Shown piece by piece: positions 21,944 to 48,206 of a DNA stretch of 64,000 bases; the first letter of the stretch is position 1, and every line of letters begins with the position of its first letter. The position numbers and the translations under genes were made by a program. A model generated the notes under the pieces. That model did no database searches, was not told the origin of the DNA, and saw only the letters and a program-made list of their open reading frames with translations. Location of the stretch: positions 62,001 through 126,000 of the IMG/VR virus record IMGVR_UViG_3300037245_001419, one strand, 5' to 3'.

Positions 21944-22732
21944 ATGGCATCTATTACGGTATCAGGTTCAACAGATAATAAAAGTTATTTTACTATCTGC
22001 TCACCGATGGTTACAGCTGATGGCAACAATATAATCAATTGTAATAGCAGCTTACCAAATTCATACTGGGATAAAGAAACCCCATGTCATGATGGTGAGA
22101 AAGAGATGTTTAATCAATTAGAAATGGATGCATGGAATTCATTCGGTATTGATATGACTTATTATATTGCTGACTGGAATGTAGATTACGATAGAATTTA
22201 CGGTGAAGATAGAGATAGACATATATTACGTAAATTCTCATTTAAAGGATTTATACCTACATACCCAGAAGAGAAACAACGTTATACAAACTTTGGTATT
22301 GATGGGTTGGATAGTTTTTCATTCTGGTCTAATATAAGCCACTTTAGTTTTGCTTCTAGGTTTGATGATCAAGGAAGCACATGTTATGATGAATACATAG
22401 CACAGGAAGGTGACATTATAAAATTTGATTATAGTGGATTGTATTATGAAGTGATGCACGTTGTTAAATCTGCTAATCAATTTTTACAAACCCAGCACTC
22501 ATATACAATCGTTGTGAGAGTGTTCAGAGATATCCATCTAACACTCAGTCCATTGGTATCATCAGATCCATTATCTGCATTTACAGATAAGCCTAAAGAC
22601 ATATTTGATATATCGGACGACATAGATGACGAAAAATTAGATTTCCTATTTAATACGTCAGCTGCAAACGAAGAACCAATCACACCTGATCCACACCCTC
22701 CGGTAAACGACGACCCTTTTGGTGGTTGGTAA
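21944..22732 (+). CDS. gp14: neck protein gp14 homolog, copy A
   Basis: YDRIYGED, FGIDGLD, EGDIIK, YEV..V and C-terminal DDPFGGW. Confidence 0.8.
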   Translation: MASITVSGSTDNKSYFTICSPMVTADGNNIINCNSSLPNSYWDKETPCHDGEKEMFNQLEMDAWNSFGIDMTYYIADWNVDYDRIYGEDRDRHILRKFSFKGFIPTYPEEKQRYTNFGIDGLDSFSFWSNISHFSFASRFDDQGSTCYDEYIAQEGDIIKFDYSGLYYEVMHVVKSANQFLQTQHSYTIVVRVFRDIHLTLSPLVSSDPLSAFTDKPKDIFDISDDIDDEKLDFLFNTSAANEEPITPDPHPPVNDDPFGGW

Positions 22733-37046: not shown

Positions 37047-37071
37047 TAGTTAATCTATACCCCCGAATAAT

Positions 37072-37101
37072 AAAGGCAGTGAATTATCACTGCCTTTTTT
37101 T
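37072..37101 (+). terminator. intrinsic terminator after gp23
   Basis: AAAGGCAGTGA-atta-TCACTGCCTTT followed by a T run. Confidence 0.9.
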
Positions 37102-37108
37102 GTGTTTA

Positions 37109-37116
37109 TATAAATA
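37109..37116 (+). promoter_or_regulatory. late promoter TATAAATA
   Basis: Exact motif upstream of 37138. Confidence 0.65.
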
Positions 37117-37137
37117 ATAATAAAATGGAGTATTACT

Positions 37138-37620
37138 ATGTCATTCGGTTCCTTTTATTTTATAGAGAAAGAAGAAGATGATTTCGATGTAGTCCATGAC
37201 GACCAGGTGTACATCGACAAAAACCTAGATGGTGAAGTGGACGATGAAGTTAAAAAAGAATTAAAAAAAGAACTTGAAGACGATGACGACGAAGATGATG
37301 ATGAAGATGATAAAATCAATGAGATCAAAAGATCACCACGGCAAAAAAGACAAGTAGCAAGAGCCAAGAGAAGTGCAATTCAAACAGCAACTGGTGGCAA
37401 GTTCTACAATTCAAGCTTAAAAGACAGAGCTAAATTTCTTTCACGATTCGAATTTAAAAAAGTAACACCGACTACTGGTATTTTCATACCTAGAAAACGA
37501 CCCCTTCCACAACTAAAGTTGTTCAGACGACTTAGAAAAGCAGCTAAAGTCATGAGAAAATTCGGTAGAATTAGAGCTAAAGGTAAAGCAGCTAAGAAAA
37601 GATCAAAAGGTAAATTCTAA
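37138..37620 (+). CDS. acidic-then-basic protein, gp68-like prohead core candidate
   Basis: D/E-rich N-half, INE site, then an Arg/Lys-rich C-half containing RSAIQTATG (compare T4 gp68 RNAFQTTG). Confidence 0.45.
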   Translation: MSFGSFYFIEKEEDDFDVVHDDQVYIDKNLDGEVDDEVKKELKKELEDDDDEDDDEDDKINEIKRSPRQKRQVARAKRSAIQTATGGKFYNSSLKDRAKFLSRFEFKKVTPTTGIFIPRKRPLPQLKLFRRLRKAAKVMRKFGRIRAKGKAAKKRSKGKF

Positions 37621-37631
37621 ACGGAGTCATC

Positions 37632-38435
37632 ATGGATGTAAGTGCAGTTGAATGTTCGGCAGTATTTAATATAAATCAACCCCAGGTTATTATGATACCT
37701 GGTTCTATATTTGCAAGTAGTTGCTTTAAGAAAGACTATTTTAATCATTTAACTAACCCGTGTTACGATAATGAAAAGAAAATGTTTGCCAACATAGCCA
37801 CTGAAATGTGGAACCAACAGGGCGTTAAACTCATCTACTACAAAGTTGACTATAACACATCTTACGACAAATTATATGGCGAAGATCGAGATAGACATAT
37901 CGAGAGACAATTCCCATTCCAAGGATACTTTATATTACCTACTGAAGAAGAGCTAATGACTCTATTTGGTATCGATGTAAAAGATATCTTCAAAATATAC
38001 GTAGCTAAACAACACTTCGAAGTCGCTTCTACTCTCAGTAATACAGGCTGTGGAGTATATGAATATGATCCATACGAACCTTGTGAAGGCGATATAATCA
38101 AAGGCAAGTGGAATGATACATTCTATGAAGTCATTGAAGTGAAAGATTCTGAAGGTACAATGCTTCAAACTAAATTAGCATGGACTCTTATTGTTAGAAT
38201 CTTCAGAGATAATCACTTTTCTGTTAATGAATTCCAACCTCCAATACCTTCAGTTAAAGCTAAAGAACTTGAAATATCTGCAGTTACAGATAAACCTACT
38301 GACATTCTCCAAATCAATGAAGAAATTGATGAAGAAAAAGAAGAGTTTCTATTCAATACATCAGCTGCTAACGAAGAACCAATAAACCCAGATCCTTACC
38401 CTCCGGTAAACGACGATCCCTTTGGTGGATGGTAG
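37632..38435 (+). CDS. gp14: neck protein gp14 homolog, copy B
   Basis: YDKLYGEDRDRHI, FGIDVKD, EGDIIK, FYEVIEV and DDPFGGW. Confidence 0.8.
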   Translation: MDVSAVECSAVFNINQPQVIMIPGSIFASSCFKKDYFNHLTNPCYDNEKKMFANIATEMWNQQGVKLIYYKVDYNTSYDKLYGEDRDRHIERQFPFQGYFILPTEEELMTLFGIDVKDIFKIYVAKQHFEVASTLSNTGCGVYEYDPYEPCEGDIIKGKWNDTFYEVIEVKDSEGTMLQTKLAWTLIVRIFRDNHFSVNEFQPPIPSVKAKELEISAVTDKPTDILQINEEIDEEKEEFLFNTSAANEEPINPDPYPPVNDDPFGGW

Positions 38436-38474
38436 TACGATTAAAGCCATTTTAAAGAGGCTGGACAGCATTTA

Positions 38475-38586: not shown

Positions 38587-39366
38587 TTATGCGATATAAA
38601 AATCTGGTGGTTGACTTTCCGATAAGATAGCATCAGTTGCTTTATCTTCCTCGATTAGAGCGTCTTGATATAAGACATCCCCATTTACCGTAGACTGACC
38701 TGGCATTGTAATACTATATTTCTTTAGATTTGTAGCCCATATCTTTTTTGATTTAGCTACTGCAAGTTGTCTGATGAGAATGTGATTATATAATTTATCA
38801 CATTGTTCACGTCTCCACACACTAACCAGACCCACACCTCCGGCTTCCGGTGTTGGTGTCACTATCAATTCTTTTCTATTTTCTCTGTATTTAACTCCAT
38901 ACATTTTACCAAACATATTATACGCATCATTTTGATACATGAATGCTATTTGAGCACTAGCTAAAGACATTCCTTGTCCGAGAGCAGTTATAGAACCACC
39001 ACCCCCCATTCCACCACCGCCACCACTACCAGCCATGCCGTAGAAGTTAAAGTTGTTTTGTAGGGTCATCCAATATGGATCAAATAAAAGAGATCCACCA
39101 CCAGTGTTATTAAAAGTAATATCGTAGGCATCCTCGATATCATCATCTAAAGGATATGCAGACACCCCAGCAGAAACTGTGAATGCGATATAGTCAGCAA
39201 ACAAAGCTTCACCGTACAGATATCTATAAGCATAATCAATACTATCTTTTATAGATAGATCTATCTGATCATCAGACAGCTCAAGGCAGATTACAGGAGC
39301 ACCCAGTGAAATTTTAATATACTCCCTGAACTGAGTAAGAGTGTTTATTCTATTAGAACATGTCAT
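38587..39366 (-). CDS. gp13: neck protein gp13 (inverted relative to its neighbours)
   Basis: FREYI..SLGAPVI.LELSDDQID and A..K..W..NLKKY....PG...NG..LY..A motifs. Confidence 0.88.
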   Translation of the reverse strand: MTCSNRINTLTQFREYIKISLGAPVICLELSDDQIDLSIKDSIDYAYRYLYGEALFADYIAFTVSAGVSAYPLDDDIEDAYDITFNNTGGGSLLFDPYWMTLQNNFNFYGMAGSGGGGGMGGGGSITALGQGMSLASAQIAFMYQNDAYNMFGKMYGVKYRENRKELIVTPTPEAGGVGLVSVWRREQCDKLYNHILIRQLAVAKSKKIWATNLKKYSITMPGQSTVNGDVLYQDALIEEDKATDAILSESQPPDFYIA

Positions 39367-39404
39367 ATTTTAACCTCTATATATAATAATAAGTGATTTA
39401 CAAA

Positions 39405-39412
39405 TATTTATA
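39405..39412 (-). promoter_or_regulatory. minus-strand late promoter TATAAATA for gp13
   Basis: The plus strand reads TATTTATA about 40 nt upstream of the gp13 ATG. Confidence 0.6.
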
Positions 39413-39428
39413 CTTTATACGGAATAAT

Positions 39429-39749
39429 ATGCCAATATATAGATGTCATTTCCCAGGATGCGATCACGTAACAAGAAATAGAAACCACATAGACTATCAT
39501 CATATCGTCCCCGTACATATGGGCGGTAGCAACAAACCCTTTAATTTAATACCAATATGCCCTACACACCACAGACATATTTTCATTCAAGGTGAGACAC
39601 AGGGTATTCACTCAGTCAGAAACTTAGAATCCATACAAATTAAGCATGTTTTAGAATCAACAGATGGAAAAGTCCTAATATATACAGACATGTATGATGA
39701 CAAAGAAAAGGCTTATTACTTCAATAATAACACAATAATTGACATGTAA
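39429..39749 (+). CDS. HNH endonuclease
   Basis: C..PGC...IDYHHIVP...GGSNKPFNLIPICPTHH motif; ATG at 39429 preferred. Confidence 0.8.
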   Translation: MPIYRCHFPGCDHVTRNRNHIDYHHIVPVHMGGSNKPFNLIPICPTHHRHIFIQGETQGIHSVRNLESIQIKHVLESTDGKVLIYTDMYDDKEKAYYFNNNTIIDM

Positions 39750-39757
39750 TATAAATA
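39750..39757 (+). promoter_or_regulatory. late promoter TATAAATA
   Basis: Exact motif upstream of gp15. Confidence 0.65.
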
Positions 39758-40647: not shown

Positions 40648-41232
40648 ATGTCCAAAAAAGACAACTCTACAGATCTAGGTGCACTGAATAAATTATCAGA
40701 TGCGTTAGACGTAGATTTTGAAAGCGAAGAAATTTTGAATAAAGCTAACGAAATACAAGTAAGAAAAAATAATATCGTTGATACCTTGAATAAGGATGAG
40801 TGGACTTTAGATGATAAAATCTACATGGAAGCCGAGATCAAGGAAACCATTTGTGGTGTAGATGACGTTATGGATATGCTCAAGAAAGATATCAAGATCG
40901 GCACACAGCCGAGAACTCACGAAGTGTACGCAACGTTAGCGAAGATCAAAATAGATGCCTTAAAGGAACTTAGAGAACTAAGTAGATCAGTTATAGATAT
41001 GAAACTCGTTAAAGCTAAAGCAACGGGTTCCGGTTCAGCTAGTAATGTTCAAGTCAATAACTATAATATGTCATCGACCGATTTGTTACAGATGGTTAAG
41101 AAAGCTAAAAACAATAACGCTCTTAATGATGTAGAAGCAAAGTTTGAGATTGATGAGAAAGATGTAGCACTCAGTTCACAGAACCCATCAGATGTATCCC
41201 TTAGCTCGAAGAATAAAAACGATGAAATTTAA
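40648..41232 (+). CDS. gp16: small terminase subunit
   Basis: PRTHEVYATL.K...DAL.EL coiled-coil motif; lies between gp15 and gp17. Confidence 0.7.
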   Translation: MSKKDNSTDLGALNKLSDALDVDFESEEILNKANEIQVRKNNIVDTLNKDEWTLDDKIYMEAEIKETICGVDDVMDMLKKDIKIGTQPRTHEVYATLAKIKIDALKELRELSRSVIDMKLVKAKATGSGSASNVQVNNYNMSSTDLLQMVKKAKNNNALNDVEAKFEIDEKDVALSSQNPSDVSLSSKNKNDEI

Positions 41233-41554
41233 AGCCTTCTATGAATTAGATCAGAAAGAACAAGAGATATTTGAAGATGTCTTTAATAGCTATTATAAGA
41301 AAGGCTATTTCGGAGACATTGACAAAGAAGAGATTAAATCCCATCAGCAGGACTGGTTTAAAAAACTCAGTCACTTCATAAAAGAAAAGAACGCTAATGA
41401 ACTCGCAATGGCTTTATCTAATAAAGAGAACAAGCTATCCAGAGAATGGTTTACTCAAATAACCGAATTGAATGTCAGGTACAAAACCAAAGAAAAAATA
41501 TTAGAAATAATAAAGGGTTATGTCGATAAGACACGAAATGAATTGAGGGAATAA
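41222..41554 (+). CDS. hypothetical protein
   Basis: Probable start MKFKAFYE at 41222, overlapping the end of gp16. Confidence 0.65.
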   Translation: MKFKAFYELDQKEQEIFEDVFNSYYKKGYFGDIDKEEIKSHQQDWFKKLSHFIKEKNANELAMALSNKENKLSREWFTQITELNVRYKTKEKILEIIKGYVDKTRNELRE

Positions 41555-41555
41555 T

Positions 41556-42335
41556 ATGTTCAAATTGAAAAGAACAAAACTTGAAAAGAAACATCAGCTA
41601 AAGCAACACACAAAATGCAAAGTTGATATTGTATACTTCGCTGAACATTATGTTAATATCAGCACCACAGACCGTGGTATTCACAAAATAGAGTTATATG
41701 ACTTTCAAAAAAGAGTATTAAATGAGTTTGTCAATAAAGAGTTTTCTCGTAATAGCATTCTATTAGCAGGTAGACAAGCAACAACTACTACTTTAGTTGC
41801 CATTTATATACTATGGTACTCATTATTTCATGAAGATAAATCTATTGCAGTATTACGGAAAAGACAATCATATGCTAATAATATTAATGGAATTATAAGA
41901 ACAGCTTATGATCAATTGCCTGACTGGCTAAAGCCTGGAATAAAAGGCGATAAGACTCGTACAGAATTTGGTACGGGCTGTGTAATACTATATATAAAGT
42001 CACATGAATCAAATCTAGCCTTACGAGGGCAATTTATATCATTGTTATATAGAGAAGAACACGAAGACCCAATAACAAAAGAAGATCAAGATTTTTTCTA
42101 TAGCGTTATACCCACATTATTATCCAGCGCCACAGCTGAAGTAATATTTACTTCGTACAAATCAACAGACGTATACAGAAAGGCTTTAGCTGGTGATAAT
42201 ACTTTTAAGCCTATTAAAATTAACTGGTGGGAAATACCAGGAAGAAGTGAATCATGGAAAAGGGATATGATAAAACATATCGGTCGTGATGGCTTCAATA
42301 AGGAGTTTGAATGTTTAACAACGACCCAAACCTAA
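41556..42335 (+). CDS. degenerate ATPase-domain-only paralog of the large terminase
   Basis: Aligns by eye over its whole length to the gp17 N-domain. Walker A GRQATTTT vs SRQIGKTT, Walker B LLYREE vs LLYLDE; no nuclease domain. Confidence 0.85.
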   Translation: MFKLKRTKLEKKHQLKQHTKCKVDIVYFAEHYVNISTTDRGIHKIELYDFQKRVLNEFVNKEFSRNSILLAGRQATTTTLVAIYILWYSLFHEDKSIAVLRKRQSYANNINGIIRTAYDQLPDWLKPGIKGDKTRTEFGTGCVILYIKSHESNLALRGQFISLLYREEHEDPITKEDQDFFYSVIPTLLSSATAEVIFTSYKSTDVYRKALAGDNTFKPIKINWWEIPGRSESWKRDMIKHIGRDGFNKEFECLTTTQT

Positions 42336-43909
42336 GAGCTGCAGCTGAAAAGATTCGTCTCAGTCCAGAGATACTTACAAAATACGTTAGAGCATCAACA
42401 GATTTAATTTATTTTGCTGAAGAATTTTTCCAGATTGTAAATATAGATGAAGGTAAACAAAAGATACGCTTACATGAGTATCAGAAAAGAGTACTTAAAG
42501 CATTTGTTGGCGATGAAGACCCTCGTATTCATAATATATTACTATCCTCTCGTCAGATTGGTAAGACAACCCTCGCAACCATATACATTCTATGGTATGC
42601 ATTATTTCGGGAAGATAAAGTTATAGCCATCCTTGCGAACAGAGAGAAAACCGCAATGGAAATATTGAGAAGAATTAAGGAAGCCTATCATGAACTTCCT
42701 TTGTGGCTTCAACAAGGTATTGTGGACTGGTCTAAAACTACAATTACATTAGAGAATGGATCAAGAATTCTTTCAGGATCAACTGCGTCTTCATCATTTC
42801 GTGGTGAATCAATTGCATTACTTTATCTTGACGAATTTGCATTCGTACCTACTCACGTAGCTGATGACTTCATACGATCAGTATTCCCTACTATTTCGTC
42901 TGGTAAGACCTCTAAGATCATTATATCGTCAACCCCTAATGGTATGGGGCCGTTCTATCATCTGTACCGTGGGGCCGTTAAAAACGAAAATAACTTTAGA
43001 CCTATTAAGGTTAATTGGTGGGAAGTTCCAGGTAGAGACGAAGAATGGAAAGAAGCTATGATCCGAGATATCGGAGCAATCAGTTTCAACCAGGAATATG
43101 GGGCAGTGTTCTTAGGATCATCAAGCACCCTTATCGATGGTAACTTATTAGAAAGACTAGGCAACTATACTAAAGAACCAATAACAGTAATACATAAACA
43201 TTTAATGAGAGTATATGAAGAGCCAGAGCCTGATGGGTTCTATATTCTCGGTGTTGACTCAGCTAAAGGAACTGGTAATGACTATTCTGTCATACAAGTA
43301 TTAAAAGTTGTAGATGAATATGAGATACATCAAGTAGCCGTATATAGAAACAATATGATTTCTACTAATGATTTTGCTCAAGCAGTGATTGGAGTATCAG
43401 AATACTATAACGGTGCTTATGTCATGATAGAAAATAATGACGTTGGTGGTGAAGTAGCTCAAAGTATGTTCTATGAATTTGAGTTTGAGAACATCCTTAA
43501 CTGTGATAAAGAAGGAATTGGTATTAGATCTACCAAGAAATCTAAATTAGCTGCTAATATTTTACTAAAAAGATATGTAGAAGCCAGTTGGTTACATATT
43601 TATGATAAACAATCGTTTTTCGAACTATCAGTTTATGAAGAAACAGCACCTAATGTGTTTAAAGCATCAGGTAACGAGCACGATGACTGTGTCACATCAA
43701 TGTTCTGGGGTCTTTATTTTGTAAAGACTGAATTTTTTGATGGTAAAGACTTATCTAAGAAAACCATAGCAGAAAAATTTAGATTGAAAGAGGTTACAGA
43801 TGAAGAAGAACCAGTTCTGATTGATGACCGACCTGTAGTTGATGGTGATGGTTTCGACTGGTCTAAAGCAATAGCAGATCATGATAACAGTTTTAATGAT
43901 TTTGCATAA
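42311..43909 (+). CDS. gp17: large terminase subunit
   Basis: SRQIGKTT, LYLDEFAF, SSTPNG; nuclease motifs GVDSAKG.G.DYS, ENN and HDDCV. Confidence 0.97.
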   Translation: MFNNDPNLRAAAEKIRLSPEILTKYVRASTDLIYFAEEFFQIVNIDEGKQKIRLHEYQKRVLKAFVGDEDPRIHNILLSSRQIGKTTLATIYILWYALFREDKVIAILANREKTAMEILRRIKEAYHELPLWLQQGIVDWSKTTITLENGSRILSGSTASSSFRGESIALLYLDEFAFVPTHVADDFIRSVFPTISSGKTSKIIISSTPNGMGPFYHLYRGAVKNENNFRPIKVNWWEVPGRDEEWKEAMIRDIGAISFNQEYGAVFLGSSSTLIDGNLLERLGNYTKEPITVIHKHLMRVYEEPEPDGFYILGVDSAKGTGNDYSVIQVLKVVDEYEIHQVAVYRNNMISTNDFAQAVIGVSEYYNGAYVMIENNDVGGEVAQSMFYEFEFENILNCDKEGIGIRSTKKSKLAANILLKRYVEASWLHIYDKQSFFELSVYEETAPNVFKASGNEHDDCVTSMFWGLYFVKTEFFDGKDLSKKTIAEKFRLKEVTDEEEPVLIDDRPVVDGDGFDWSKAIADHDNSFNDFA

Positions 43910-43943: not shown

Positions 43944-43951
43944 TATAAATA
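43944..43951 (+). promoter_or_regulatory. late promoter TATAAATA
   Basis: Exact motif in the gp17-gp18 intergenic region. Confidence 0.65.
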
Positions 43952-46020: not shown

Positions 46021-46596
46021 ATGCCTCAAAAGCAATTTCACATAAACCAACGAATATCAAAAAATAAAGATATTCTAAGACAGTATCTCTTTGAAGTGAG
46101 AATTCCTACGCCACCAGGCTTACAGAATGCATGGGACGAAGATGATATGGTTATAAGAGTAAGAACCGCTCAGATACCAGCTCGTGGGAACGAACCTATC
46201 CAGAGTGATTTTTTCGGTATGAAAAGATTTTATCATGGTAAAGTAAACTATGAAAATACATTAACTCTTCAAATAGAAGAATATGATGATACAAAATCTA
46301 TGCTCAGATTCGAACAATGGAATAACTTACTCACTGACATGAATCATAAACAGAATTCTGGTGCAGCAAAAGAGACAAGAGAACAACTTATTAGTGATAT
46401 AGAATTAATAACTTATAAAGCTAATGGTCATGAAACAGAAGCTCACGTAACACTTTACAATGCTTTTATTAGCAATGTAGCTACAGTATCGCTTGCATAT
46501 GGAGTAAATGAATCTGTAAAATATGAAGTAGTTTTCACATACGACTACTGGTTATTTACAGATCCTAACAACACAGATTCACCAGTAGATGATTAA
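46021..46596 (+). CDS. gp19: tail tube protein
   Basis: YLFEV.IP, TAQIPA, G...YHGK..Y...LTL, FEQW and FTYDYW; follows the sheath gene. Confidence 0.88.
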   Translation: MPQKQFHINQRISKNKDILRQYLFEVRIPTPPGLQNAWDEDDMVIRVRTAQIPARGNEPIQSDFFGMKRFYHGKVNYENTLTLQIEEYDDTKSMLRFEQWNNLLTDMNHKQNSGAAKETREQLISDIELITYKANGHETEAHVTLYNAFISNVATVSLAYGVNESVKYEVVFTYDYWLFTDPNNTDSPVDD

Positions 46597-46601
46597 TAAC
46601 T

Positions 46602-47336
46602 ATGGCTAAACTAAATTCAGGATCTAAGTTGGTTGAGAGCTTTTTTAGTGACTCTCGATCAATTCAGAGAACCTATAATTTTATGATAGATTTCCCTGAT
46701 TCGAATAACGATTCAGGGAATCTTAAACATAGACTCAGCGTACTCTCAGAGTCCGCTGGTTTTTCTAATTTTAGCCCTAGAACTTATTTGAGTAATTATC
46801 ACGTTAAGAAAGTAAATGTTGATCAGTATGCATTTAAAAAAGAAATGCAACAGATTGGAGTTTTTCCAAAAACTATTCCCGTATTAGACCATAAAGGTTT
46901 TGAATTAGAAATAGAGTTAGAAGAAGACGCAAGAGGAACTATTGGATTCTTTATACAATGGCTTCAAGCAAGAATCTTAGATGAATTTGGACTCTATACA
47001 GATCCAAATACTGCAAGATTAGGCCCAGTCAACATAAACATCACAGATGAGACATCAGATCTCATAGCAACATATTCATTCATGGATTGTTACTTCCTAA
47101 AAGCGAGTAAGCCTGAATATAATTACAGAAACAACAATACCATCACATATACAATTACCTTTGGATCAGATTACTATGAACTAGTGTATTCTAAAGGCAG
47201 TGTACCTGCGGTCAACACTAAACAAAACCCTATAAATTCTGGTGGTAAAGGTCACGGTAGTCAAGGTGGTGGTGGTGGAGCTGGATCAATTCTTGGTGGT
47301 GCTGGGCCAATGATACAAATACAACCTCTTCTCTAA
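46602..47336 (+). CDS. tube-fold baseplate/tube initiator (gp54-like)
   Basis: Tube-like fold pattern (ELEEDA...FIQW, TYSF..CY, TITF..DYY); position after gp19. Confidence 0.6.
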   Translation: MAKLNSGSKLVESFFSDSRSIQRTYNFMIDFPDSNNDSGNLKHRLSVLSESAGFSNFSPRTYLSNYHVKKVNVDQYAFKKEMQQIGVFPKTIPVLDHKGFELEIELEEDARGTIGFFIQWLQARILDEFGLYTDPNTARLGPVNINITDETSDLIATYSFMDCYFLKASKPEYNYRNNNTITYTITFGSDYYELVYSKGSVPAVNTKQNPINSGGKGHGSQGGGGGAGSILGGAGPMIQIQPLL

Positions 47337-47338
47337 AA

Positions 47339-47346
47339 TATAAATA
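47339..47346 (+). promoter_or_regulatory. late promoter TATAAATA
   Basis: Exact motif upstream of gp26. Confidence 0.65.
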
Positions 47347-47381
47347 ACTGTATACAAATTTATTTTATACGGAGAATTGAT

Positions 47382-48206
47382 ATGAAAATGGAAGATGTAG
47401 ATGAAAATGGATCTGTTCCAAATCAAACAACTGAAGTAAAGACCCCTAAAAAGTCGAAACCAGTTGAACCTATTTCAAAAGATACCTATCACCCAATAGA
47501 CGATTTACCTTCAAAGTTCAAAATGTACCCTAAAGGTACTAAACTTTCAGCCAGACCCCTAAAGGTTATGGAAGTTAAAATGCTTTCTACAATGAACGAA
47601 GATAACGCCAACTATGTAATAAATCAAGTACTGAAGAAAACAGTCAGAGGATATTCTATTGACGAATTATATGTCTCGGATAAACTTTTCTTGATTTTCT
47701 GGCTTAGAGCCAACACTTACGCTGATTCTGGTTACTCTATTGAGTTCGAATGTCCATTGTGTGAAGAGAATTCTAATTATGACTTCGACCTAGACTGTCT
47801 TGATATTCTAGATATTAAAGATGATTATGATATCAATAAAGATATTATTCTTCCTGGATCAAAGCACACTATTAAAGTTACTCAACTTAAGATAAAAGAT
47901 GAAAATAATGTTCAGAATTTTATCGAAAAGAGTAAGAAACTTCCCATCAAATACGAAACAGACGTGCTGGCTATTGCAAATTTAATCACTCACATCGACG
48001 ATAAAGAAATAACTGATTTGAAACAGAAGTATAATTACCTATTGGATATCCATCCTAGTGATTATGCATACCTTGAATCATATATTCTGCATTATGAGAT
48101 GGGTGTAAATCCATTTATGGACGTTAAATGCAATAAATGCGGAGGGTCGTCGCCTATGGCGGTAACGTTTCGTGCCGATTTCTTTGTTCCCAAGTATAGA
48201 TTTTAA
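47382..48206 (+). CDS. gp26: baseplate hub assembly protein (gp26-like)
   Basis: RPLKVME.K.L, DKLFLIFWLRA and two CxxC pairs (CPLC, CNKC). Confidence 0.8.
   Translation: MKMEDVDENGSVPNQTTEVKTPKKSKPVEPISKDTYHPIDDLPSKFKMYPKGTKLSARPLKVMEVKMLSTMNEDNANYVINQVLKKTVRGYSIDELYVSDKLFLIFWLRANTYADSGYSIEFECPLCEENSNYDFDLDCLDILDIKDDYDINKDIILPGSKHTIKVTQLKIKDENNVQNFIEKSKKLPIKYETDVLAIANLITHIDDKEITDLKQKYNYLLDIHPSDYAYLESYILHYEMGVNPFMDVKCNKCGGSSPMAVTFRADFFVPKYRF

What the first reader, a model, noticed from the sequence alone, without database searches (positions are those of the whole stretch)
41556..42335. Catalytically dead, ATPase-only copy of the large terminase directly upstream of the real gp17
Seen in sequence: the 259-aa ORF aligns by eye to the gp17 N-domain (YFAE, QKRVL, IYILWY.LF.EDK.IA, LP.WL..GI, F.PIK.NWWE.PGR.E.WK..MI) and stops at the ATPase/nuclease boundary. 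The catalytic residues are gone: Walker A SRQIGKTT becomes GRQATTTT (no Lys), Walker B LYLDE becomes LYREE, and SSTPNG becomes TSYKS. Structural residues are kept, the frame is intact and its end overlaps the gp17 start, which suggests selection rather than decay. Inference: a pseudo-ATPase that could regulate or join the packaging motor. Alternatively it could be a decoy for host sensors that recognise the terminase ATPase domain, since Avs-type antiviral STAND NTPases are known to do so.
Basis: partly seen in the sequence, partly recalled or inferred. Interest (0 to 1): 0.78.

Follow-up and report, generated by a model that had tools for sequence, protein, structure and literature searches.

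The report
Dead, hypervariable copy of terminase ATPase
A T4-like phage from marine sediment carries, just upstream of its DNA-packaging enzyme gene, a copy of that enzyme's ATPase domain that has lost its catalytic residues yet stays open under selection. This copy is also the one hypervariable gene in an otherwise nearly clonal phage population, which suggests a non-catalytic mimic caught in an arms race.

Summary
ORF 41556-42335 (259 aa) is 42% identical (E 2e-59) to the ATPase half of the adjacent large terminase (TerL). It lacks the Walker A lysine, has altered Walker B and coupling motifs, stops at the ATPase/nuclease boundary and overlaps the TerL start by 25 nt.

It is not decaying. 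Three alleles stay open across synonymous divergence above 1 (dN/dS about 0.1-0.45). The AlphaFold2 model (pLDDT 92) matches the T4 gp17 ATPase domain (TM 0.85).

Two findings are new:
- **Divergence hotspot.** Related contigs are 99.5% identical over 14.5 kb, but the gene's core is about 40% identical in protein. Three alleles coexist in one sample at about 86, 11 and 3%, next to an identical TerL.
- **Recurrence.** Short TerL-ATPase paralogs beside TerL occur in other T4-like phages. Some are dead; others keep the motifs. In the cultured Sinorhizobium phages phiM12 and phiN3, the annotated 'gp17.2' is likewise a local divergence hotspot.

The sister phage and nearer outgroups lack the gene.

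The function is not established. I favour a non-catalytic TerL mimic that faces a variable antagonist over a motor subunit that co-evolves with TerL.

The parts
39750..39757 (+). T4-type late-promoter-like motif TATAAATA ahead of the gp15-like gene. There is no further copy until 43944.
   Evidence: 22 matches in the window against 10.5 expected, 19 of them on the + strand.
40648..41232 (+). Candidate small terminase (194 aa)
   Evidence: Weak PHROG hit to phrog_445, terminase small subunit, E 3.6e-4. It sits between gp15 (Pfam T4-gp15_tss) and TerL.
41192..41554 (+). Conserved 120-aa ORF of unknown function. In the sister phage L020 its stop lies one base before the TerL start codon; in outgroup L022 the ORF overlaps the TerL start.
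   Evidence: No Pfam or PHROG hit. Homologues of 110 and 117 aa in L020 and L022.
41545..41550 (+). Shine-Dalgarno sequence GAGGGA of the paralog. The same junction precedes TerL in the sister phage.
41556..42335 (+). Catalytically degenerate paralog of the TerL ATPase domain (259 aa)
41769..41792 (+). Degenerate Walker A (residues 72-79, GRQATTTT). The Lys is replaced by Thr; Arg73 is kept.
   Evidence: The other alleles read GRQATTTT and GRQASTST.
42042..42059 (+). Degenerate Walker B (residues 163-168, LLYREE). It differs among alleles (LLFIDD, LLYRED).
42150..42164 (+). Degenerate coupling (C) motif TSYKS, followed by a 5-residue deletion relative to TerL
41717..42136 (+). Hypervariable core. 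The P0002 allele diverges over about 41717-42136. The P0003 allele diverges from the ATG (41556) to about 42133. Both share a right border near 42136.
42300..42305 (+). Shine-Dalgarno sequence AAGGAG of TerL, formed by paralog codons Lys249-Glu250
42311..43909 (+). Functional-looking large terminase (532 aa) with intact Walker A, Walker B and C motifs and a nuclease domain
43944..43951 (+). Next late-promoter-like motif, ahead of the sheath gene

Best explanation
Shown: the ORF is a partial copy of a T4-type large-terminase gene (start codon to the ATPase/nuclease boundary). It sits exactly where TerL starts in the sister phage. It has lost the P-loop lysine and canonical Walker B and C motifs, so it almost certainly cannot hydrolyse ATP the way TerL does. 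It is kept as a foldable protein-coding gene. No late-promoter motif separates it from the candidate small terminase and TerL, so one late transcript probably carries all three (inferred from motifs). Its core is a population-level hypervariable region of single origin, and its alleles coexist next to an invariant TerL. Inferred mechanism: the protein acts by shape, as a non-catalytic mimic of the TerL ATPase domain that binds something which normally binds TerL. TerL and the candidate small terminase do not change when the paralog's core does, and three old alleles are kept at this locus only. The partner that shapes the core is therefore most likely an external, variable antagonist. Candidates are host sensors of the terminase ATPase domain (Avs1-3, Upx), or terminase-hijacking or competing mobile elements. 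The loss of nucleotide binding and the rapid turnover would then serve either to evade or to jam such recognition. My confidence that it is a selected, non-catalytic TerL paralog is about 0.9. My confidence in the 'mimic facing a variable antagonist' mechanism is about 0.4.
For: - Homology and motif loss.
- Fold: AlphaFold2 pLDDT 92.4, pTM 0.90; Foldseek TM 0.84-0.86 to T4 gp17 ATPase 2O0H/2O0J/3CPE.
- Coding constraint: open frames in three alleles, P(open) 0.0003 in shuffles, 16-33 stops in the other frames. dN/dS is 0.11-0.17 in the N segment and 0.27-0.46 in the core, with dS 1.15-1.8.
- Hotspot: 183 of the 254 differences between the window and L007 over 15.3 kb lie in this 780-bp gene; the rest is 0.49% divergent.
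- Core identity between alleles is 36-45%, no closer than to real TerLs.
- A tree of the core columns alone still joins the three alleles at 100/99 support, so the core has a single origin.
- Coexistence: in run X1 the allele unitigs have depths 376.9, 46.7 and 14.1, against flanks of 429 and 419.
- TerL is 100% identical in L002, which carries another allele.
- Co-transcription is inferred from late-promoter motifs at 39750 and 43944 only, and both genes have strong Shine-Dalgarno sequences.
- Independent replicate: between phiM12 and phiN3, gp15 and gp16 are 100% and gp17 99.1% identical in protein, but gp17.2 is 82.5% (dS 0.47 against 0.06-0.10, dN 0.100 against 0.005).
- Precedent: terminase ATPase domains alone, and T4 vs.8, are recognised by EcAvs2, and Upx senses the ATPase domain (bioRxiv 10.64898/2026.04.30.721860).
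Against: - I have no expression or protein data.
- No host or defence system is known for this phage.
- Published data show that ATPase-only domains activate Avs2 rather than block it, so a decoy would need an unproven non-activating binding mode.
- Variation affects buried strands as much as helices (invariant positions: 15% in helices, 24% in strands, 26% in loops). This looks like a 'must only fold' constraint rather than surface-targeted diversification.
- A recombination hotspot combined with weak constraint could produce the polymorphism without diversifying selection.
- The sister phage and outgroups do without the gene, so it is dispensable.
- The AlphaFold2 alignment was dominated by real TerLs, which biases the model toward the TerL fold.
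Confidence: 0.4

Rival explanations
1. It is an intrinsic accessory of the phage's own packaging motor. A dead ATPase-domain subunit would bind the portal, TerL or the small terminase through its conserved N- and C-terminal segments. It would tune initiation, motor assembly, speed or nuclease activity, for example by occupying portal or ring positions or by titrating the small terminase.
For: - It lies in the same late gene block as the candidate small terminase and TerL and overlaps the TerL start.
- The C-terminal 65 residues (the subdomain-II-like part) are 94-100% identical among alleles, and codons 211-240 are the part most similar to the phage's own TerL at DNA level (70% identity).
- Arg73 and Gln51 are retained.
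- The T4 motor tolerates 1-3 dead subunits, and a peptide of the portal-interacting helix-loop-helix inhibits packaging (review PMC9958956).
- Short paralogs recur next to TerL in several T4-like lineages.
Against: - The core varies freely while TerL is identical and the other packaging genes are nearly so, unlike a co-evolving subunit.
- The conserved 3' end shows almost no synonymous change either (dS 0.03), so it reflects a recombination border as much as purifying selection.
- The sister phage and outgroups lack the gene.
- phiM12 gp17.2 lacks the subdomain-II part altogether.
Confidence: 0.3
2. It is a weapon or shield in conflicts between mobile elements. One version is a dominant-negative ATPase domain that poisons the packaging motors of co-infecting related phages. 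The other is a sponge for small terminases or other terminase-hijacking proteins of phage satellites.
For: The same population signature applies: three old alleles at one locus in a clonal background. A second, 81%-identical phage without the gene co-occurs in the same sample. Dead subunits slow T4 motors.
Against: There is no direct evidence. No satellite or interference system was identified here. The protein would have to spare the phage's own motor although it keeps TerL-like conserved segments.
Confidence: 0.1
3. It is a tolerated remnant of a tandem partial duplication with no function of its own. It persists only because its 3' end supplies the ribosome-binding site and coupled start for TerL, and its core drifts and picks up recombinant tracts.
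For: The catalytic motifs are gone. The gene is absent in close relatives. The TerL Shine-Dalgarno sequence lies inside the ORF. Amino-acid evolution is strongly accelerated (core dN 0.41-0.53 against 0.115 for the TerL N-domain between the window and L020).
Against: - Three alleles stay open through dS above 1, with in-frame indels only. P(open) is 0.0003 per allele in shuffles.
- dN/dS is below 0.5 everywhere and 0.11-0.17 in the N-terminal segment.
- Hydrophobic core positions and TerL-invariant structural residues are kept.
- Independent lineages keep similar full-domain ORFs that end at the same boundary.
Confidence: 0.08
4. The two ORFs are joined by programmed frameshifting into a TerL isoform with an extra dead ATPase domain at its N-terminus.
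For: There is a 25-nt overlap, and TerL lies in the -1 frame relative to the paralog.
Against: There is no X_XXY_YYZ slippery heptamer in the overlap. TerL has its own AAGGAG Shine-Dalgarno sequence and an ATG at the same N-terminus (MFNNDP) used in the sister phage that lacks the paralog.
Confidence: 0.02

Closest known systems
T4 gp17 large terminase, N-terminal ATPase domain (PDB 2O0H, 3CPE; Pfam Terminase_6N)
   Same: Clear sequence homology (E 1.4e-20 to PDB chains; 42% identity to the phage's own TerL) and the same predicted fold (TM 0.84-0.86). Same domain limits. The Q-motif Gln and the Arg next to the P-loop are kept.
   Different: No P-loop Lys. Walker B and the coupling motif are altered. 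No nuclease domain. It falls below the Pfam reporting limit (no family at E <= 0.01). Its amino-acid substitution rate is roughly ten times that of TerL, and it is polymorphic where TerL is invariant.
'gp17.2' of Sinorhizobium phages phiM12, phiM7, phiM19 and phiN3 (GenBank annotation), and PHROG phrog_5989
   Same: A short TerL-ATPase paralog between gp16 and gp17 that overlaps the gp17 start. phrog_5989 is the best PHROG hit of both proteins (2.2e-39 for the window ORF; 4.5e-73 for gp17.2). It is also a local divergence hotspot.
   Different: gp17.2 keeps GKT and the Walker B Asp-Glu pair and stops earlier, at the coupling motif (196 aa). It is only 34% identical to its own gp17. In the first tree it is a long branch that does not group with the window's clade. 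I found no published discussion of it.
T4 vs.8 (uncharacterised TerL-like ATPase)
   Same: A stand-alone protein of a T4-like phage that is homologous to the terminase ATPase domain. [quoted passage not shown]
   Different: vs.8 has intact Walker A and B motifs. It lies far from gene 17, in the vs-denV region of the T4 genome. It shows no significant BLASTP similarity to the window ORF.
Other metagenomic short TerL paralogs (P0017, P0134, P0070, P0064, P0152, P0049)
   Same: ATPase-domain-only ORFs that end at the same boundary, located next to or near TerL in T4-like structural modules. P0134, P0070, P0152 and both halves of P0049 have also lost the Walker A Lys.
   Different: They are separate lineages. 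P0017 groups with its own TerL clade and is 49% identical to that TerL. A single clade of the window's alleles with P0017, P0064, P0070 and P0134 is marginally rejected (p-AU 0.042). P0017 and P0064 keep the catalytic residues. Their polymorphism was not examined.
Split-intein N-terminal fragments of TerL in metagenomes
   Same: ORFs of similar length (about 300 aa) that end just after the QE[FY]xC motif at the domain boundary.
   Different: Those ORFs keep all catalytic motifs, continue into an intein N-fragment and are halves of one enzyme. Here the downstream TerL is complete, and the tail after Cys253 is the TerL 5' end read out of frame.

Membership tests
T4-type large terminase (functional TerL) | Homology to the Terminase_6N ATPase domain | tested here: met
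   BLASTP E 2e-59 to the neighbouring TerL. PDB gp17 E 1.4e-20. Fold TM 0.85. Pfam itself reports no family at E <= 0.01.
T4-type large terminase (functional TerL) | Walker A with the GK[T/S] lysine | tested here: not met
   GRQATTTT in the window allele; GRQATTTT and GRQASTST in the other alleles.
T4-type large terminase (functional TerL) | Walker B hhhhD followed by the catalytic Glu, and the S/T-S/T-T coupling motif | tested here: not met
   LLYREE, LLFIDD and LLYRED among alleles. The coupling motif is TSY, followed by a deletion.
T4-type large terminase (functional TerL) | C-terminal RNase H-like nuclease domain (Terminase_6C) | tested here: not met
   The ORF ends at the domain boundary. 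Terminase_6C is found only in the neighbouring gene.
gp17.2 / phrog_5989 short TerL paralogs | Best profile match to phrog_5989, and a position upstream of TerL and downstream of the small-terminase gene | tested here: met
   phrog_5989 E 2.2e-39; gp17.2 scores 4.5e-73 to the same family. Gene order. In the window a 120-aa ORF lies between the candidate small terminase and the paralog.
gp17.2 / phrog_5989 short TerL paralogs | Common descent with gp17.2 (one clade) | tested here: inconclusive
   gp17.2 is a long branch placed elsewhere. A clade of the window's alleles with four metagenomic short paralogs has p-AU 0.042. gp17.2 was not in that test.
T4 vs.8 family | Sequence similarity to vs.8 and intact Walker A/B | tested here: not met
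   BLASTP is not significant (E 0.12 over 15 residues). The Walker motifs are degenerate.
Diversity-generating retroelement target gene | A template repeat near-identical to the variable region, and adenine-specific substitutions without indels | tested here: not met
   There is no second copy of the variable region in the 64-kb window apart from a 49-nt match to the TerL homologue. The alleles differ by indels and by saturated synonymous change. The rest of the genome, about 150-185 kb, was not searched for a reverse transcriptase.
Anti-defence decoy or inhibitor of terminase sensors (Avs1-3, Upx) | Binding to the sensor, and relief or triggering of its toxicity | not testable with these tools
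   Only indirect evidence: the population signature and published recognition of ATPase-only domains.
Split-intein TerL N-fragment | An intein N-fragment after the boundary Cys, and a separately encoded C-terminal half | tested here: not met
   The tail is six residues read from the TerL 5' end. The downstream TerL is full length with its own ATPase domain.

The most novel reading that the evidence does not exclude
Short, often catalytically dead, fast-evolving copies of the terminase ATPase domain may form a recurrent class of phage counter-measure in T4-like phages. They would be molecular mimics of the protein that many bacterial immune sensors (Avs1-3, Upx) or hijacking satellites recognise. 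They would be kept as balanced polymorphisms because their targets vary between host strains. The loss of the P-loop lysine would be adaptive, removing the nucleotide that the sensors read.
Probability: 0.25. Interest if true: 0.85.

Novelty: new variant of a known kind. Interest (0 to 1): 0.65.

Why it matters
The large terminase is the most conserved protein of tailed phages and a main target of bacterial pattern-recognition immunity. A selected, non-catalytic and hypervariable copy of its sensed domain, arising repeatedly next to the real gene, would add either a new layer of packaging control or a new kind of anti-defence or anti-parasite mimic. The same pattern in cultured Sinorhizobium phages (gp17.2 of phiM12 and phiN3) gives a genetically tractable system in which to test it. 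It also matters for annotation: PHROG and GenBank label these ORFs 'terminase large subunit', which hides that some cannot be enzymes.

Tried and rejected
- **Diversity-generating retroelement.** There is no template-like repeat in the window. The alleles differ by indels and saturated synonymous change.
- **Silent cassettes inside each genome.** Alternative-allele unitigs have depths of 14 and 47 against about 429 for the flanks, so they are population variants.
- **Independent capture of the cores from different real TerLs.** The core-only tree joins the three alleles at 100/99 support.
- **Duplication after the split from the sister phage.** A clade of the paralog with the window's TerL, excluding L020, is rejected (p-AU 0.008). 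A clade with both TerLs is not rejected (p 0.108). Long branches make both tests soft.
- **Membership in the T4 vs.8 family.** There is no similarity.
- **Programmed frameshift.** There is no slippery site, and TerL has its own Shine-Dalgarno sequence and ATG.
- **Assembly artefact.** The arrangement is present in five samples or assemblies.
- **Charge or pI signature.** The window's alleles are basic (pI 9.0-9.3), but other short paralogs are not, so this is uninformative.
- **Searches that found nothing.** megablast against INPHARED, two scans of metagenome contigs, and literature searches for gp17.2 and for terminase pseudoenzymes.
- **Runs that did not complete.** A 75-row AU test did not finish in time and was redone on 32 rows.
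- **Reads.** The public runs are held only as contigs, so rare alleles and RNA expression could not be assessed.

Full report
**1. What is there**

The window is part of a T4-like myovirus assembled from a marine sediment metagenome.

Genes near the finding, with Pfam evidence:
- a gp13-like gene on the minus strand
- an HNH-like ORF
- gp15
- a 194-aa candidate small terminase (weak phrog_445 hit)
- a conserved 120-aa ORF
- the finding's ORF (41556-42335, 259 aa)
- a 532-aa large terminase (TerL, 42311-43909; Terminase_6N + Terminase_6C)
- tail sheath and tail tube genes

The T4 late-promoter motif TATAAATA is enriched in the window and occurs mostly on the + strand. It is present at 39750 and 43944 but not between them. 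The genes from gp15 to TerL therefore look like one late transcription unit; this is an inference from motifs. Both the paralog and TerL have strong Shine-Dalgarno sequences.

**2.

- The ORF aligns with TerL residues 22-266 at 42% identity, E 2e-59.
- The P-loop Lys is replaced: SRQIGKTT in TerL against GRQATTTT here.
- Walker B LLYLDE becomes LLYREE.
- The coupling motif SSTPNG becomes TSYKS, followed by a 5-residue deletion.
- The Q-motif Gln51 and Arg73 remain.
- phmmer finds T4 gp17 structures at E 1.4e-20. The degenerate P-loop aligns with gp17 residue 161 onward in 3EZK numbering.
- An AlphaFold2 model built on a 44-row alignment has pLDDT 92.4. It superposes on the gp17 ATPase domain at TM 0.84-0.86. 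The alignment was mostly real TerLs, which favours this outcome.

**3. Origin**

- In the sister phage L020 (TerL 81% identical, same sample), the 110-aa ORF is followed directly by TerL (its stop ends one base before the TerL ATG). The junction sequence is the same one that precedes the paralog in the window.
- The paralog therefore occupies the ancestral TerL start. Its last six codons are the TerL 5' end read out of frame, and TerL's AAGGAG is made of paralog codons 249-250. This is the footprint of a tandem duplication of the 5' 0.75 kb of a TerL gene.
- Outgroups with 58-61% identical TerL also lack the paralog.
- Trees do not resolve its position.
- AU tests do not reject a clade of the paralog with the TerLs of the window and L020 (p 0.108). 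They reject a clade with the window's TerL alone (p 0.008).
- The donor was therefore the TerL of this phage group or a near relative. The timing remains open, because the long branch weakens both tests.

**4. Not a pseudogene**

- Two further alleles exist. P0002 (253 aa) is found in four samples. P0003 (256 aa) lies on a 981-bp contig from the window's own sample.
- All three are open and differ only by in-frame indels.
- Shuffled versions of the variable 110 codons stay open in 0.0003 of trials, and the other frames hold 16-33 stops.
- dN/dS is 0.11-0.17 in the first 84 codons and 0.27-0.46 in codons 85-194, where dS is 1.15-1.8 and near saturation.
- By comparison, the TerL N-domain between the window and L020 has dN 0.115 and dN/dS 0.04.
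- The paralog is thus constrained, but its protein sequence evolves about ten times faster than TerL.

**5. The unexpected part: a hypervariable gene in a clonal background**

- Over 15.3 kb aligned with L007 there are 254 differences. Of these, 183 lie inside this 780-bp gene. The remaining 14.5 kb is 0.49% divergent.
- The alleles share 36-45% protein identity in the core (residues 85-194), no more than with real TerLs.
- The last 65 residues and the flanks are 94-100% identical.
- The P0002 allele diverges over about 41717-42136. The P0003 allele diverges from the start codon to about 42133.
- In the source run the assembly graph splits here. The allele unitigs have depths 376.9, 46.7 and 14.1, and the flanks 429 and 419. 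A second run carries only the P0002 allele.
- The cores have one origin: a tree of the core columns alone joins them at 100/99 support.
- Their synonymous divergence is far higher than that of the flanks. They are therefore old alleles moved by recombination, not recent hypermutation.
- There is no template repeat, and the unitig depths exclude silent cassettes.
- TerL is 100% identical in L002, which carries a different allele.
- Within the core, variation is spread over helices, strands and loops. Strand positions that vary mostly keep hydrophobic residues.

**6. The arrangement recurs**

An exhaustive phmmer search of 1.84 billion representative proteins found no further member of this exact family. 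It did find other ATPase-only TerL paralogs that end at the same boundary:

| Protein | Length | Motif status | Context |
|---|---|---|---|
| P0017 | 258 aa | motifs kept | 49% identical to the TerL that follows it |
| P0134 | 265 aa | Lys to Val; Walker B Asp-Gly | a TerL start follows 7 nt later |
| P0070 | 273 aa | Lys to Gly | before a gp16-like gene; TerL lies four genes further on |
| P0064 | 261 aa | Walker A/B kept; coupling motif degenerate | follows a 194-aa ORF downstream of gp15 |
| P0152 | 396 aa | Lys to Val | short contig |
| P0049 | 612 aa | two tandem dead domains | short contig |

- Cultured Sinorhizobium phages phiM12, phiM7 and phiN3 carry an annotated 'gp17.2' between gp16 and gp17. 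phiM19 shows the same second terminase-like match in tblastn. gp17.2 keeps GKT and the Walker B Asp-Glu pair but is truncated at the coupling motif.
- Between phiM12 and phiN3, gp15 and gp16 are 100% and gp17 99.1% identical in protein. gp17.2 is 82.5% identical (dS 0.47 against 0.06-0.10).
- The hotspot behaviour is therefore not peculiar to this window.
- A single clade of the window's alleles with P0017, P0064, P0070 and P0134 is marginally rejected (p 0.042), which suggests repeated origins.
- Many other hits of about 300 aa are split-intein halves of real TerLs and are a different thing.

**7. Mechanism**

Shown:
- a foldable, non-catalytic copy of the TerL ATPase domain
- maintained by selection
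- polymorphic at population level, next to an invariant TerL

Inferred:
- **Expression.** It is expressed late together with the packaging genes.
- **Mode of action.** It acts by mimicry of TerL's ATPase domain.
- **Partner.** The partner that shapes its core is external and variable.

Published work bears on the last point. Terminase ATPase domains alone activate EcAvs2 and Upx. The T4 ATPase-only paralog vs.8 is toxic with EcAvs2. The authors suggest that such proteins may be anti-defence factors. This makes an immunity link plausible. It also shows that such a domain can be a liability, in which case losing ATP binding and varying quickly could be evasion rather than decoying.

The main rival is an intrinsic motor accessory:
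- The T4 motor tolerates 1-3 dead subunits, and a portal-binding peptide inhibits packaging.
- The C-terminal subdomain is invariant among the alleles.
- However, that segment lacks synonymous change too, so it marks a recombination border as much as constraint.

I rate the antagonist-mimic model at about 0.4, the motor accessory at 0.3, inter-element conflict at 0.1, a functionless remnant at 0.08 and a frameshift fusion at 0.02.

**8. Novelty**

Stand-alone TerL-like ATPase proteins are on record: vs.8, the GenBank 'gp17.2' annotation and phrog_5989. In the searchable literature I found no description of a catalytically dead, selected, hypervariable copy next to TerL, nor of the recurrence of such copies. 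I file this as a new variant of a known kind.

Noticed in passing
window 39393-39749 (+); L020 1884-2216: A 118-aa ORF with an HNH-type motif lies between the gp13-like gene and gp15. Its Pfam HNH score is 20.1 bits, just under the 21.4 cut-off. It is also present in the sister phage that lacks the terminase paralog, so it is not linked to the duplication.
   Followed up: partly
window 41192-41554 (+): A 120-aa ORF with no Pfam or PHROG hit is conserved between the candidate small terminase and TerL in this phage group (110 aa in L020, 117 aa in L022). It may be a second packaging accessory or part of the small terminase.
   Followed up: partly
whole window: The T4 late-promoter motif TATAAATA occurs 22 times against 10.5 expected, 19 times on the + strand. 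This fits T4-type late transcription in this distant relative.
   Followed up: partly
L011 3375-3965, L025 1878-2462 (Sinorhizobium phages phiM12 and phiN3): gp17.2 is a local divergence hotspot in cultured phages: 82.5% protein identity against 99-100% for gp15, gp16 and gp17. This offers a laboratory model for the phenomenon.
   Followed up: yes
L015 436-2274 (P0049): A 612-aa metagenomic protein consists of two tandem TerL-ATPase-like domains, both without the Walker A lysine. It forms a clade with P0152 (396 aa, Lys to Val). Its genomic context is unknown because the contig is short.
   Followed up: partly
proteins P0008, P0010, P0015, P0019, P0037, P0038, P0062 and many hits longer than 600 aa: Many metagenomic T4-like TerLs are split by split inteins at the ATPase/nuclease boundary, or carry inteins inside the Walker A motif (GK|C...HN|TT).
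   Followed up: no
window 22572-22731 and about 38278-38437: A 160-nt stretch at the 3' end of the 267-aa ORF (37632-38435) has a 79% identical second copy near 22.6 kb. This may be a C-terminal module shared by two structural genes.
   Followed up: no
window about 46059-47560 and 37059-37560: There are minor clusters of differences between the window and L007 (4-13 per 500 nt) in the tail-tube region and the following genes, and in the region just upstream of the 267-aa ORF. They are far weaker than the hotspot in the paralog.
   Followed up: no
window 38587-39366 (-): The gp13-like neck protein contains a glycine-rich run (GSGGGGGMGGGG) that differs in length from the sister phage.
   Followed up: no
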